In this document: piece by piece, positions 7,815 through 11,417 of the stretch
How positions within the stretch are numbered: the stretch's first letter is position 1
Layout: each line of letters opens with the position of its first letter
Assembly: GCF_001194135.2 (NCBI RefSeq)
Contig: NC_068996.1
Span: forward strand, 19,839,523 to 19,885,960
Length of the DNA: 46,438 bases
Origin: Octopus bimaculoides
Taxonomy: Eukaryota
Direction of reading: 5' to 3'
Made by a program: the position numbers and the translations under genes
The notes under the pieces: generated by a model
Databases searched by the model: none
Told to the model about the DNA's origin: nothing
The model's input: the letters and a program-made list of their open reading frames with translations, nothing else

Positions 7815-7845
7815 AATAATAATAGTGATGATGATGATGATGATG

Positions 7846-8522
7846 TACAGAATTGACAACACTATTGATAGCAACAAATGCAGAATGTGTGGTGAGAGGG
7901 GTGAAACGGTATGGCACATCGTTAGCGAATGCCCCGGAATTGGCACAGCGCGATTATAAACGATGCCATGACAATGTGGCAAGAATGATCCATTGAGAGC
8001 TCTGTGGAAATCACAGCCTACAAAGAGCAAAGACGTGGTATGAACAAACACCAGAAGGAGTCACCAAAAATGAGAACTGCAAAATTCTGTGGAATGTAAT
8101 GATCCAGTACGATCACCTGACCAGATATCGGAAACTGGACATTGTCGGAGTGAACAAAAAAGAAAGAACACGTATGAGTATCGACAGGGTCAATGTGAAA
8201 GAAGAAGAAAAAATAAACAACTATGACGATTTGAAGAGGGAAATACGAAGGTTGTGGTCAATGAAGAGAGTAGACGTGATACCAATAGTAATTGGTACAC
8301 TTGGAAGTATCAGCACTCACCTACCAACATGGCTGAAAAAGATTGGTGCAAGTGTGAAGGTAGAACATCCACAAAAATCAGCATTGCTTGGAACTGCAAG
8401 AATTCTTCGCAGGGTTCTTGAAGTATGACCAGTAAACAAGTGTCACCTTAGTCTGCTGTGAATAGCTGATACTTTCCATCATACCCAGGAAAATAAGCTG
8501 TGAATTTTCATATAATAATAAT
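7846..8522 (+). mobile_element. R4/Dong-like 3' fragment (lineage A) with TAA tail
   Basis: KCRMCGERGETVWHIVSEC..HDNVA..KILWN..RKLDIV..YDDLKREIRRLWSMKRVDVIPIVIGTLG..LLGTARILRRVLEV*, 3' UTR, taataataat. Confidence 0.92.
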
Positions 8523-8524
8523 GA

Positions 8525-8825
8525 TAAAAGACCAATAAGCCAGATATAGTTGTCAGAGTTCATCAAGATAAAAAATGCTTTCTAATTGATTTATCAATAC
8601 CAATAGGTGATGACGACTCTCTAAAAGAAACAGAGAAACTTTCAAAATACAAAGATATGGAAATACAAGTAACTCGAATATGGAGCCTAAAAGCAGAAAC
8701 AATTCCTATCATAGTACGCGCATTAGGTATGATAGAAAAACATTCAAACAAATACATTACAAAAACACCAGGATTTACAAATATATATAAACATACAGAA
8801 AATAGCACTACTAGGCACCGCACAG
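8525..8825 (+). mobile_element. R4/Dong-like REL endonuclease fragment (lineage B)
   Basis: NKPDIVVRVHQDKKCFLIDLSIP..KETEKLSKYKDMEIQVTRIWSLKAETIPIIVRALG (PD..D..K catalytic pattern); cut by (GAA)n. Confidence 0.9.
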
Positions 8826-9271
8826 GAAGAAGAAGAAGAAGAAGAAGAAGAAGAAGAAGAAGAAGAAGAAGAAGAAGAAGAAGAAGAAGAAGAAGAAGAA
8901 GAAGAAGAAGAAGAAGAAGAAGAAGAAGAAGAAGAAGAAGAAGAAGAAGAGGAGGAGGAGGAGGAAGTGGAAGAAGAAGAAGAAGATGATGAAGAAGAAG
9001 AAGAAGAAGAAGAAGAAGAAGAAGAGGAAGGAGAGGAAGAAGAAGAAGAAGAAGAAAGAGGAGGAGGAGAAGAAGAAGAAGATGATGAAGAATAGGAGGA
9101 GGAGGAGGAAGTGGAAGAAGTAGAAGATGATGAAGAAGAAGAAGAAGAAGAAGAAGAAGAAGAAGAAGAAGAAGAAGAAGAAGAAGGAGGAGGAGGACGA
9201 GGAGAAGAAGAAGAAGAAGAAGAAGAAGAAGAAGAAGAAGAAGAAGAAGAAGAAGAAGAAGAAGAAGAAGA
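8826..9271. repeat. ~445-bp (GAA/GAG)n polypurine tract
   Basis: Direct reading. Confidence 0.97.
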
Positions 9272-10316
9272 TATAAGGGAATTCCGAATATAACAAATTC
9301 CAGAATTAGACGTACTCGAAACAAGCGCAGAAAAAGCTAAGAGCGTGAAAACCCGTTGTAAAACTGCTGCCTTAGATATTTTGACTGATAAAGGGCAAGA
9401 AAAACCTCTCGATGGCAAATATCCAAAGAGAGCGAATAATGGCGATGTTGACAAAGCCCTTACCCATCAATGGATAATGGCTTCTGGCTTCAAATCAGAA
9501 ACACAAGGGTTTATCATAGCAGCCCAAGATCAATGCCTACCTTCAAGGAACTACCAGACCAACATATTAAAGAATGGCAGTAACCCAACATATTGTGTAT
9601 ATCAACAATAAAATGAAACCATTGATCATGTTGTCTCCATGTGCAGTCTTCTTGTGCCTACAGAGTATCTCAACAGGCATGATAGAGCAGCACAATATAC
9701 TCCCTGGGTAATTTGCAAAAACCTGGACCTGTCCCATGATAAGAACTGGTGGGAACACACACCAAATCCAGTGCTTGAAAATGCTCACATCTCACTCCTC
9801 TGGAACTTCACCATTCAAACTGACAGAAAGATAGATGCGAATAGGCCAGACATTGAAAGACTTCAATGAAAGATATTGAAAGACTTCAGACAAAAATCAT
9901 GCCTCCTCATTGATATGGATGTCCCAATAGACCTACCAAAAACTGAGCAACTATAAAGATCTTGAAATAGAAATTGGCAAAATGTGGAACCTAAAACAAT
10001 GCCTCTAAAAGGGGGCTGATTGCTACCTAGCTCAGATACCAGGAAATCCCATAATGGCAGAAATTCAAAAGATAGTGCTCATGGGAACTACCCATATCCT
10101 ACGTAAAATACTGTCTATGTAATCTCAAATTTTAAAACAAACTCATAATTTTCGTATAGTTTCTTAAACATTTTCTAGAACAACACTATGTACAAATCCA
10201 AATATATGGCACGCTAGGCATTACACCAACATGAACTTCTAACTTGGTGTCTCTTGAGGTCTCTGGGTGAGACTTGGAACCAACTTGTACAAATGCAAAA
10301 CAAAAGTCAAACATAA

Positions 10317-10378
<62 letters not shown>
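9272..10378 (+). mobile_element. R4/Dong-like 3' fragment (lineage C) with 3' UTR and (TAA)n tail
   Basis: QEKPLDGKY..KSETQGFIIAAQDQCL..ETIDHVVSMC..EYLNRHD..LLWNFTIQTDRKIDANRPDI; tail 10318-10378. Confidence 0.92.
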
Positions 10379-10380
<2 letters not shown>

Positions 10381-10885
10381 GCCCTGATGCAGTACCAGGC
10401 AGTGGCTCTCATGGCTTCTGATCTTAATTGATTGGAAGTGTTATCATGTACATTGTTTTGTCTTGGTATAAAAGATGGGCTACAGTAAATATTTTGCTCA
10501 ATACCACAGATTTGCTTGTCAGTTGTTTGACCTTAACCAGTTGAGCATGTCCCTTGGTGGCTGACGATATGTGAATCTCTGATCATGAGCAGAAGTAGTG
10601 GGGGGCATCATACCCATGTGTTGAGAGGAATTCTTTGGGGTTTGAATAATTCACCTTTGGAAACATGGGTGTTTTGCTCAACATCCTTAAACAACCCTTA
10701 TTCAGGGACCTTTTGAGCGGAATGGGCTACTCGACCTGAAGAAAATTCTAACTGGGCCCCATCTGCGAGGTCATACGCTGTTTGTCTTGATATGAGACCA
10801 CCATGTCGCGCACATATGGTTGTGATGCATATGCCTTGTGTGCCCTTATCAGACGGGTAGTCATGATGGGTATAATGGGATTTTT
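10379..10885. mobile_element. Non-coding AAT/ATT-flanked interspersed element, copy 2 (one end truncated)
   Basis: High similarity to 3196-3840; no credible ORF; fused directly to the following Dong fragment. Confidence 0.85.
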
Positions 10886-11288
10886 TACATTAAGACTGAC
10901 AGATTAAAATAAGGTAGAAGGCCTGATTTAGTAGTAGTAGACAAAGAGGAAATAAAGTGCCAAGTAATTGACTTTACAGACTCAAAAGATGAGAAAATCA
11001 ATGTGAAAGATTTTGAGAAAATCGCAAAGTACCAGGACCTAGCCATTGAGTCTATGGGGAATTGGAGATACAAATATATTTCCTGTAGTTATAGGTGCAT
11101 TAGGAACTATCCCTTAAGATCTGAACAGATGGATAGAGGAAATAGGCATAAAACCTAGGTTAATGCAGCTCCAGAAAACAATATTAAGGACAGCTGGGAT
11201 TGTTAGGAAGTTATTTGGCATCTTAGGTCACTTGTTGCAGCCCAATTTTAGAAATTTTTTCCAACAGACTGATCTGTTGTGCGTATAT

Positions 11289-11337
<49 letters not shown>

Positions 11338-11351
11338 TAATAATAATAATG

Positions 11352-11415
<64 letters not shown>

Positions 11416-11417
11416 TA
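10886..11417 (+). mobile_element. R4/Dong-like endonuclease C-terminus (lineage D) with (TAA)n tail
   Basis: RRPDLVVVDKEEIKCQVIDF..EKIAKYQDLAIE..PVVIGALGTI..QLQKTILRTAGIVRKLFGI; tail starts near 11289. Confidence 0.88.

What the first reader, a model, noticed from the sequence alone, without database searches (positions are those of the whole stretch)
7824..11417. Head-to-tail stack of four different Dong-like 3' ends plus a rider element
Within 3.6 kb, all on +: lineage A (7846-8522), B (8525-8825), C (9272-10378), the non-coding element (10379-10885) and D (10886-11417). B starts directly after A's TAA tail and the rider directly after C's. This looks like a self-reinforcing landing pad in which each insertion creates the target for the next, analogous to telomeric LINE arrays but interstitial.
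Basis: partly seen in the sequence, partly recalled or inferred. Interest (0 to 1): 0.7.

Follow-up and report, generated by a model that had tools for sequence, protein, structure and literature searches.

The report
Head-to-tail stack of Dong-type LINEs
Four unrelated, broken copies of a jumping gene that inserts only into TAA repeats, plus a small non-coding hitch-hiker, lie nose-to-tail in an octopus genome; this follows from what is already known about this family, so it is a clear example and not a new kind of thing.

Summary
On the + strand, 7846-11420 contains four 5'-truncated 3' ends of restriction-like-endonuclease (RLE) LINEs. They share only 28-43% protein identity, so they are four lineages. 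Three keep a (TAA)n tail. A 510-nt non-coding rider sits between C and D.

B starts immediately after A's 16-nt tail, and the rider starts immediately after C's 66-nt tail. The other two junctions are not tail-to-head:
- B has lost its last ~9 codons, its UTR and its tail to a (GAA)149 array.
- The rider has lost its last ~47 nt and its tail where D begins.

The reverse transcriptase of this family matches only R2-group proteins strongly in the PDB. The window is octopus, where Dong-R4 LINEs are known to be abundant. Dong is known to target (TAA)n.

Stacking is general. In the window and five related long-read loci, neighbouring copies no more than 5 kb apart share orientation 15:1. Of 13 copies with a complete ORF end, 12 have a same-strand (TAA)n just downstream and none has an opposite-strand array.

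Best explanation: polar, TAA-targeted target-primed reverse transcription, in which each tail renews the target. Whether the tails or one large pre-existing array supplied the target is not resolved.

This is a new instance of a known kind, of modest interest.

The parts
7815..7845 (+). Upstream flank of the stack: (AAT)3 followed by (TGA)7. Probably a remnant of the original TAA-type target at A's 5' junction.
   Evidence: Read directly from the sequence.
7846..8511 (+). Unit A. A 5'-truncated Dong-like 3' end: CCHC knuckle (CRMCGERGETVWHIVSEC), decayed RLE motif, conserved stop at 8426-8428, ~83-nt 3'UTR. It has one frameshift, one stop and one 7-aa deletion.
   Evidence: tblastn and translation. 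A 76% identical relative lies at 233-542 on the minus strand.
8512..8527 (+). A's short, imperfect tail, ATAATAATAATGATAA.
   Evidence: B follows with no spacer.
8528..8825 (+). Unit B. A Dong-like fragment that starts at the RLE 'KPDIVV' motif. It is open for 86 codons, then has a frameshift, and ends at '...IQKIALLGTAQ'. The last ~9 codons, the 3'UTR and the tail are missing.
   Evidence: A 75% identical relative lies at 1927-2116 on the minus strand.
8826..9271 (+). (GAA)149 microsatellite with internal higher-order duplication. It lies between truncated B and the 5' end of C. Its origin is unexplained.
   Evidence: TRF.
9272..10312 (+). Unit C. The longest fragment: linker region 'KPLDGKYP', decayed CCHC, RLE 'RPDI...LIDM', stop after 10119, ~190-nt 3'UTR. 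It has three stops, one frameshift and indels.
   Evidence: E = 5e-63 to P0010.
10313..10378 (+). C's (TAA)22 tail.
   Evidence: TRF.
10379..10888 (+). Rider copy 1. A non-coding, non-autonomous element with a full 5' end directly after (TAA)n. It is 3'-truncated by ~47 nt relative to copy 2 and has no tail.
   Evidence: blastn and alignments. Stops in all frames. No Rfam or tRNA match.
10883..11289 (+). Unit D. A Dong-like fragment starting at 'FYIKTDR...RPDLVVV'. It overlaps the end of rider homology by up to 6 nt (TTTTAC). It has three stops, a frameshift, a lost stop codon and a ~68-nt 3'UTR.
11290..11420 (+). D's (TAA)44 tail, which is the downstream end of the stack.
   Evidence: TRF.
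3120..3892 (+). (AAT)25, then rider copy 2 (3197-3841, with N gap 3369-3696), then (AAT)17. This complete rider is flanked on both sides by same-strand TAA repeats.
163..2598 (-). A second stack, on the minus strand: (TAA)34 at 2597-2496, B-like fragment at 2492-1927, weak Dong-like piece at 1253-915, A-like 3' end at 542-233, tail at 241-165.
18316..19287 (-). A solitary Dong-like 3' end (61% identical to P0017 over 213 aa) with a (TAA)9 tail at 18316-18344.
40014..42846 (+). An internal Dong-like fragment at 40014-40149, preceded by (GAA)42. Then (AAT)12 at 40150-40186. Then the 5' region and RT of a longer Dong-like copy, which starts directly after the TAA repeat.
   Evidence: RT matches to R2 proteins at E ~1e-12.

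Best explanation
The stack is the product of repeated, independent insertions of Dong-type LINEs (R2-group, carrying a restriction-like endonuclease), and of a non-autonomous element that uses the same route, into one (TAA)n tract of an octopus chromosome.

Inferred mechanism, by analogy with R2 and the documented Dong specificity:
1. The element's endonuclease nicks one particular strand of a TAA repeat.
2. The (UAA)n end of the element RNA anneals to the nicked strand, and reverse transcription is primed from the target.
3. Every insertion therefore lies with its sense strand collinear with the TAA strand and ends in a fresh (TAA)n tail.
4. That tail, or what remains of the original tract, is a valid target in the same polarity. 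Later insertions, from any lineage with this specificity, land head-to-tail. Most are 5'-truncated.

Shown here: the homology, the polarity, the tails, two exact tail-to-head junctions, and the generality of co-oriented stacks.

Inferred: the strand-specific nick, tail-primed reverse transcription, and that tails rather than the original tract were the targets.

The B/(GAA)n/C and rider/D junctions are secondary events. Either the 5' end of the incoming cDNA joined inside the upstream unit with loss of target sequence, or a later deletion occurred. In the B-C case microsatellite growth was also involved.
For: - Homology of A-D to the CCHC plus PD..D..K C-terminus of one LINE family.
- The only PDB matches of the C-terminal profile are R2 proteins, collinear over the knuckle and nuclease motifs (weak, E = 0.28-0.9).
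- The RT of the same family matches R2 proteins at E = 3e-24 for a related, near-complete element and at E ~1e-12 for the window's own RT, against ~3e-7 for L1 ORF2p.
- A-D are 28-43% identical, are truncated at different points, and show no DNA cross-hits. They are therefore independent insertions and not a duplication.
- Tails: 12 of 13 copies with a complete ORF end have a same-strand (TAA)n 68-414 nt downstream, and none has an opposite-strand array.
- Orientation of neighbours no more than 5 kb apart: 15 same, 1 opposite, p = 2.6e-4.
- L004 9786-11964 reads (TAA)11, lineage 1, (TAA)5, lineage 2, (TAA)9, RT fragment. L001 has five co-oriented copies.
- The window holds a second stack on the other strand at 163-2598.
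- The window is octopus, where Dong-R4 is an abundant, multi-family LINE group (PMC13282606, PMC8967140, PMC9115989).
- Dong targets (TAA)n in insects, molluscs and cnidarians (PMC3812793, PMC7998251).
Against: - Only two of the four internal junctions are tail-to-head.
- C's 5' end abuts (GAA)149, not TAA. D's 5' end abuts the rider body.
- Clade membership (R4/Dong versus HERO or another R2-group clade) was not tested by phylogeny.
- No biochemical evidence for strand-specific TAA cleavage exists for this family in the sources I could read.
- The related loci come from unnamed ENA assemblies, not from the same genome, and they were chosen because they contain a family member. The neighbours' orientation was not selected for.
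- The draft assembly could have mis-joined across the long GAA array.
Confidence: 0.8

Rival explanations
1. One pre-existing long (TAA)n microsatellite was hit several times. The element tails add nothing essential, so the site is a passive target and not a self-renewing one.
For: - A is preceded by a short (AAT)3 remnant, and D is followed by a 131-nt array.
- The genome is very rich in TAA arrays, 16 in 46 kb, and about half of them have no recognisable element attached.
Against: - Every copy with a complete ORF end carries its array at a family-typical distance after its own 3'UTR, in several genomes. The tails therefore travel with the element.
- B follows A's UTR after only 16 nt, which fits a tail better than a remnant of a large array.
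- The two models predict almost the same final structure and are not mutually exclusive.
Confidence: 0.15
2. The rider and D are one unit: an internally deleted Dong-like element, in the manner of the SIDE derivatives of R2, made of the lineage's 5' untranslated region fused to its 3' end. In that case the stack holds four insertions, not five.
For: - Rider copy 1 has a complete 5' end directly after (TAA)n but no 3' end or tail of its own.
- D has no TAA at its 5' side.
- The two overlap by up to 6 nt.
Against: - Rider copy 2 continues for ~47 nt past the junction into sequence unrelated to D and has its own tail.
- Its 3' end shows no significant similarity to D's 3'UTR (p = 0.27) or to any other Dong 3'UTR in the window.
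- No rider sequence is found upstream of any Dong ORF in the sequence available.
Confidence: 0.12
3. Assembly artefact: the stack, or at least the B-C join, is a chimera created by collapsing or bridging microsatellites in a gapped short-read scaffold.
For: - The window has 11 N gaps.
- B and C are joined only through 446 bp of imperfect (GAA)n.
- D's tail is 131 bp long.
Against: - There is no gap inside 7824-11417.
- The A-B join (16-nt tail) and the rider-D join (no repeat) are spanned by unique sequence.
- The same architecture is seen in megabase contigs whose names suggest long-read assemblies (L001-L005).
Confidence: 0.07
4. Chance co-location in a transposon-rich, low-recombination region, or local tandem duplication by unequal exchange between TAA arrays.
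For: - The window is dense with transposons of many kinds.
- Random placement gives P = 0.025, which is not overwhelming.
Against: - Orientation concordance of 15:1 across six sequences.
- Base-exact tail-to-head junctions.
- The four units are different lineages truncated at different points, which excludes duplication.
Confidence: 0.03

Closest known systems
Dong (Bombyx mori) and Dong-like elements of the R4 clade (DongAg, DongBg, Darwinula Dong, octopus 'Dong-R4' families)
   Same: - A single ORF with RT followed by a CCHC knuckle and a restriction-like endonuclease.
- A (TAA)n 3' tail and insertion into (TAA)n tracts.
- Frequent 5' truncation.
- Abundant in molluscs, including octopus (PMC3812793, PMC7998251, PMC13282606).
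   Different: - Clade placement by RT phylogeny was not done here.
- The 5' self-cleaving ribozyme shown for Bombyx Dong (PMC3774820) was not detected with Rfam models at the 5' ends available here.
- I found no explicit description of multi-lineage stacks in the papers I could read.
R2 (28S rDNA-specific RLE LINE) and its internally deleted non-autonomous derivatives (SIDEs)
   Same: - R2 proteins are the best structural and sequence relatives of the RT and of the C-terminal knuckle plus nuclease.
- Sequence-specific target-primed reverse transcription.
- The existence of non-coding riders that use the same target.
   Different: - The target is a microsatellite, not a unique rDNA site, so each insertion can recreate its own target. 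R2 destroys its site.
- The rider shows no detectable similarity to any Dong end in the window.
Telomeric-repeat-specific LINEs (TRAS/SART of Bombyx) and Drosophila HeT-A/TART/TAHRE arrays
   Same: Polar head-to-tail arrays of several LINE lineages, built because the elements target a simple repeat or a chromosome end and leave a substrate for the next insertion (general knowledge; PMC10088271 for context).
   Different: - Those elements use an AP-type endonuclease or none.
- They sit at chromosome ends and have a host function.
- Here the arrays are small, internal to a 57.5-Mb record (the window's position within it is unknown), made of dead copies, and have no evident function.
Other microsatellite-specific LINEs (Waldo/Mino, Kibi, Koshi, Togen) and microsatellite-biased Penelope-like elements (Naiad, Chlamys)
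   Same: Use of a microsatellite as an insertion target. Non-autonomous partners and multicopy head-to-tail insertions are reported for Chlamys (PMC3812793, PMC4640811, PMC8557442).
   Different: Different enzymes (AP-type or GIY-YIG endonucleases) and different repeat motifs.

Membership tests
R2-group (RLE-bearing) non-LTR retrotransposon | Reverse transcriptase most similar to R2-group RTs | tested here: met
   A stitched translation of the window RT (41462-42430) has R2 proteins as top PDB hits at E ~1e-12, against ~3e-7 for L1 ORF2p. The related L002 RT gives E = 3e-24 to R2 and no L1 hit below 0.01. Pfam RVT_1 matches at E = 1.7e-27.
R2-group (RLE-bearing) non-LTR retrotransposon | CCHC zinc knuckle (CX2CX8HX4C) downstream of the RT | tested here: met
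   The cysteines are invariant in the alignment of 14 relatives. The knuckle is intact in A (CRMCGERGETVWHIVSEC) and decayed in C. There is a weak Pfam zf-RVT match.
R2-group (RLE-bearing) non-LTR retrotransposon | PD-(D/E)XK restriction-like endonuclease after the knuckle | tested here: inconclusive
   The motifs (K/R)PD(I/L)V ... (L/V)ID ... EK..KY(K/Q)D are present in B, C and D and align to the R2 nuclease region. The profile hit is not significant on its own (E = 0.28-0.9). The structure model was too poor to use (pLDDT 39).
Dong / R4 clade | (TAA)n 3' tail | tested here: met
   A, C, D, the A-like copy and the 18477 copy all carry one. Across the window and loci, 12 of 13 copies with a complete ORF end have one.
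Dong / R4 clade | Insertion into (TAA)n, i.e. a TAA repeat also at the 5' junction | tested here: met
   Met for A, B, both rider copies, the B-like copy, the copy at 40187, and L001, L004 and L005. Not met for C (GAA array) or D (rider body).
Dong / R4 clade | RT groups with R4/Dong in a phylogeny of RLE clades (R2, R4, NeSL, HERO, CRE) | not testable with these tools
   No reference sequences for R4, Dong, HERO or NeSL were available. The database hits are unnamed fragments. Indirect support: in octopus, Dong-R4 is by far the commonest RLE LINE group (PMC13282606).
Dong / R4 clade | 5' self-cleaving (HDV-like) ribozyme at the TAA/element junction | tested here: inconclusive
   Rfam covariance models at E <= 10 found nothing at the rider 5' end or at 40187. 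Divergent ribozymes of this class are easily missed.
SINE / non-autonomous partner of a LINE (the rider) | Pol III-type head (tRNA, 5S or 7SL derived) | tested here: not met
   ARAGORN and Rfam found nothing.
SINE / non-autonomous partner of a LINE (the rider) | 3' end shared with the partner LINE | tested here: not met
   There is no significant similarity to any Dong-like 3'UTR in the window. Only the (TAA)n tail is shared. The true partner may simply not be in this window.
SINE / non-autonomous partner of a LINE (the rider) | Several copies with identical termini, no coding capacity, and the same target as the partner | tested here: met
   Two copies, 93% identical, with the same 5' end directly after (TAA)n. 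Copy 2 has a (TAA)n tail. There are stops in all frames.

The most novel reading that the evidence does not exclude
TAA tails form a genome-wide positive feedback loop in octopus. Dong-R4 LINEs, riders such as this one, and the very abundant TAA-tailed SINEs (which also lie head-to-tail in this window, at 20400-21355) would all use one TAA-directed machinery. Each insertion would seed a new TAA array, so the family both creates and feeds on the genome's TAA microsatellites. The resulting polar arrays could let promoter-less downstream units be transcribed by read-through and released by 5' self-cleavage, as shown for Bombyx Dong.
Probability: 0.15. Interest if true: 0.55.

Novelty: new member of a known kind. 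Interest (0 to 1): 0.27.

Why it matters
The locus is a compact, readable record of how a microsatellite-specific retrotransposon behaves. It shows strict polarity, renewal of the target by the tail, use of one site by several lineages, and a non-coding passenger.

For octopus genomics it has three practical implications:
- Many (TAA)n arrays are retrotransposon tails.
- Repeat annotators will meet composite Dong-R4 'elements' that are really stacks.
- Methods that call new insertions from short reads will be nearly blind to this family, because both junctions are TAA repeats. This may bear on the reported lack of polymorphic Dong insertions (PMC9115989).

It does not change what is known about the mechanism.

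Tried and rejected
- Structure prediction of the C-terminal domain from a 14-sequence alignment gave pLDDT 39. No fold search was run on it.
- Protein database searches with the C-terminal ORF and the RT fragment returned only short, unnamed fragments, so no named full-length reference and no clade phylogeny were possible.
- Exact-protein look-ups for two window ORFs found nothing on record.
- The idea that 2599-3124 is a rider relative was rejected by alignment and by blastn.
- The idea that the rider's 3' end mimics D's 3'UTR, as in a SINE-LINE pair, was tested and is not significant (p = 0.27). A scan of all 3' ends found only A/A-like and SINE/SINE pairs.
- Rfam at permissive thresholds gave only low-complexity false hits at the rider and at 40187.
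- The long inverted repeats reported by the repeat finder are runs of N.
- Ordering the insertions by ORF decay or by pairwise identity (rider pair 93%; A and B pairs ~75%) was considered and dropped. Pairwise identity between copies does not date an insertion, and the rider-D and B-C junctions can each be read either as target loss at insertion or as a later deletion.
- The Kojima & Fujiwara 2004 and Xiong & Eickbush 1993 papers are not held in the library.
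Full report
**What the window is.** The 46.4-kb window is a gapped draft scaffold, with 11 runs of N totalling 4,834 bases. It is AT-rich and crowded with microsatellites (81 TRF rows). A Tigger-like ORF at 25329-26015 is identical to a protein on a 57.5-Mb record. Its nearest named relatives are from Octopus bimaculoides and O. sinensis, so the window is from an octopus chromosome. Other transposons are present: Tc1- and pogo-type DDE transposases, an AP-endonuclease LINE on the minus strand near 43.1-43.5 kb, and several SINE copies.

**Checking the observation.** I translated the five stated segments. I then searched the window with 45 relatives of a well-preserved ORF of the same type at 18876-19262 on the minus strand. 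A (7846-8511), B (8528-8825), C (9272-10312) and D (10883-11289) all align, on the + strand, to the last ~210 residues of one ORF family.

The aligned region contains three conserved features:
- a CX2CX8HX4C knuckle, intact in A and invariant in the alignment of relatives;
- then (K/R)PD(I/L)V ... ID ... EK..KY(K/Q)D;
- then a conserved C-terminus, '...IQKIVL..T.HILRK.L..*'.

A, C and D continue through a 70-190-nt 3'UTR into (TAA)n tails of 16, 66 and 131 nt. B starts at the base after A's tail, and the rider starts at the base after C's tail. The four pieces share only 28-43% protein identity and give no blastn cross-hits. They are therefore four lineages and four separate insertions.

The rider (10379-10888) has stops in every frame. 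It has a second copy at 3197-3841 that is 93% identical, starts with the same bases directly after (AAT)25, and ends in its own (AAT)17 tail.

- B is not complete at its 3' end. It stops at '...IQKIALLGTAQ', about nine codons short of the family's stop codon, with no UTR and no tail. It runs straight into a 446-bp (GAA)149 array (8826-9271), and C begins on the far side of that array.
- The rider in the stack lacks the last ~47 nt and the tail that copy 2 has. Homology to copy 2 ends at about 10888, while D's protein homology begins at 10883 ('FYIKTDR'). The two units therefore overlap by up to six bases, TTTTAC.

Each of these two junctions can be read in two ways. Either the 5' end of an incoming cDNA joined inside the upstream unit with loss of target sequence, or a later deletion occurred. 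I could not decide between these readings, so the order of events is not established.

**What kind of element.**
- A related, nearly complete copy in locus L002 has a 444-aa RT ORF followed by the 222-aa knuckle/nuclease ORF. That RT matches only R2 retrotransposon proteins in the PDB, at E = 3e-24 to 1e-21.
- The window's own RT lies in a longer copy that starts directly after (AAT)12 at 40187. Stitched across one frameshift, it matches R2 proteins at E ~1e-12, against ~3e-7 for L1 ORF2p.
- Protein P0015 bridges the RT thumb ('HPKADVDRLY...') to the knuckle. The same bridge sequence is present at 42.6-42.8 kb.
- A profile of the C-terminal domain finds only R2 proteins, collinear over the knuckle and nuclease. 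These matches are weak (E = 0.28-0.9).

These are therefore R2-group LINEs with a restriction-like endonuclease. Within that group, a (TAA)n tail and insertion into (TAA)n are the hallmark of Dong and the R4 clade (PMC3812793). [quoted passage not shown] In octopus, Dong-R4 is an abundant, multi-family LINE group (PMC13282606, PMC8967140, PMC9115989). I could not run the RT phylogeny that would formally place these copies in the clade.

**Is stacking more than chance?** Within the window alone the case is moderate. With nine pieces placed at random, four or more in one orientation within 3.6 kb occurs with P = 0.025. The wider evidence is stronger:
- A second stack lies on the other strand at 163-2598. 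It reads (TAA)34, a B-like fragment, a weak piece, an A-like 3' end and a tail. The lineages are in the opposite order to the + stack and are only ~75% identical to A and B, so this is not an inverted duplication.
- I fetched 20 kb around five relatives from three ENA assemblies with megabase contigs and mapped family members and TAA arrays. In every locus the anchor copy has co-oriented neighbours. L001 has five copies and L004 has four within 6.6 kb. L004 9786-11964 reads (TAA)11, lineage 1, (TAA)5, lineage 2, (TAA)9, RT fragment, which is almost a replica of the finding.
- Pooling the window and the loci, successive copies no more than 5 kb apart share orientation 15 times and differ once (one-sided binomial p = 2.6e-4).
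- Of 13 copies with a complete ORF end, 12 have a same-strand (TAA)>=4 array 68-414 nt downstream, and none has an opposite-strand array. The exception is A, whose short tail is followed at once by B.

**Mechanism.** The simplest account is polar, repeat-specific target-primed reverse transcription. One strand of the TAA tract is nicked, the (UAA)n end of the RNA pairs with it, and the cDNA is primed from the target. Every copy therefore lies collinear with the TAA strand and ends with a new TAA tract in the same polarity. Any lineage with the same specificity, and any non-coding RNA that the machinery accepts, can then land behind it.

The polarity, the tails and the junctions are shown here. 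The nick, the priming and the use of tails rather than the original tract are inferred from R2 biochemistry and from the published Dong specificity.

For the rider, only the tail is shared with the LINEs. Its 3' end resembles no Dong 3'UTR in the window. It has no tRNA, 5S or 7SL head and no Rfam match. Its partner and its mode of expression remain open. Bombyx Dong RNA is cut out of a longer transcript by a 5' self-cleaving ribozyme exactly at the TAA/element junction (PMC3774820). The rider's base-exact 5' end in both copies would fit such processing, but Rfam models found nothing, so this remains a lead only.

**Rivals.**
- A single large pre-existing TAA tract hit repeatedly would give nearly the same picture. 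It is not excluded, and partly filled orthologous alleles would decide.
- Rider plus D could be one internally deleted element. This is possible but unsupported, because copy 2 continues past the junction into unrelated sequence and has its own tail.
- Mis-assembly is a real concern only for the B-(GAA)n-C join. The A-B and rider-D joins are in unique sequence, and the same architecture occurs in other assemblies.
- Chance accumulation and tandem duplication are disfavoured by the orientation statistics, the junctions and the divergence among the units.

**Unexplained.** (GAA)n arrays occur twice in the window directly 5' of a 5'-truncated Dong-like fragment: at 8826-9271 before C, and at 39888-40013 before 40014-40149. 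In both cases the fragment begins in the Lys/Glu-rich linker upstream of 'KPLHGKYP'. None of the five related loci has such an array. Possible causes are expansion of a purine-rich coding stretch at the truncated 5' end, additions at the junction, or coincidence in a GAA-rich genome.

**Verdict.** It describes an expected consequence of a known target specificity in a genome where the family is already known to be abundant. I found no paper in the held library that describes multi-lineage Dong stacks as such, so this is a good new instance of a known kind and not a new mechanism.

Noticed in passing
window 20400-21355 (minus strand); also 3892-4150: Four copies of a ~200-nt SINE lie head-to-tail in one orientation, and one junction is a (TAA)5-type tail. 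Another copy, at 3949-4150, has a (TAA)19 tail that abuts, tail to tail, the (TAA)16 tail of rider copy 2. TAA-tailed SINEs therefore stack as the Dong-like LINEs do and may use the same machinery.
   Followed up: partly
window 8826-9271 and 39888-40013: Long (GAA)n arrays sit directly 5' of two different 5'-truncated Dong-like fragments. Both fragments begin in the same Lys/Glu-rich part of the ORF. No such arrays occur in the five related loci. The first array has an internal higher-order duplication.
   Followed up: partly
window 163-2598 (minus strand): A second stack of Dong-like fragments on the opposite strand (B-like, a weak piece, A-like with tail). It begins directly after a (TAA)34 array. 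The lineage order is the reverse of the + stack.
   Followed up: yes
window 40187-43100: A longer Dong-like copy starts directly after (AAT)12, with a 5' region and an RT carrying YMDD. It is followed from about 42850 by a second RT fragment, and then by an AP-endonuclease LINE on the minus strand (43064-43483).
   Followed up: partly
window 3842-3948: (AAT)17 runs directly into (ATT)19. This is a palindromic junction of two TAA tails of opposite polarity, so opposite-strand insertions next to a TAA array do occur for some TAA-tailed elements.
   Followed up: no
window 33442-34134 / 38113-38805 and similar: The long 'perfect inverted repeats' listed by the repeat finder are runs of N in the scaffold, not sequence.
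   Followed up: yes
L001 10837-11802: In a related locus, a 5'-truncated LINE of another type (its RT has the 'LSKAFD' motif and a Pfam RVT_1 match) starts directly after the (TAA)n tail of a Dong-like copy, in the same orientation.
   Followed up: no
window 15462-15559, 39468-39526, 2990-3070: Recurrent GCN-rich 27-30-bp tandem or low-complexity motifs ('CAGCAGCAACAGT...GTGACAGC') occur at several places. One of them lies upstream of the (TAA)23 array at 3125. This may be part of another repeat family.
   Followed up: no
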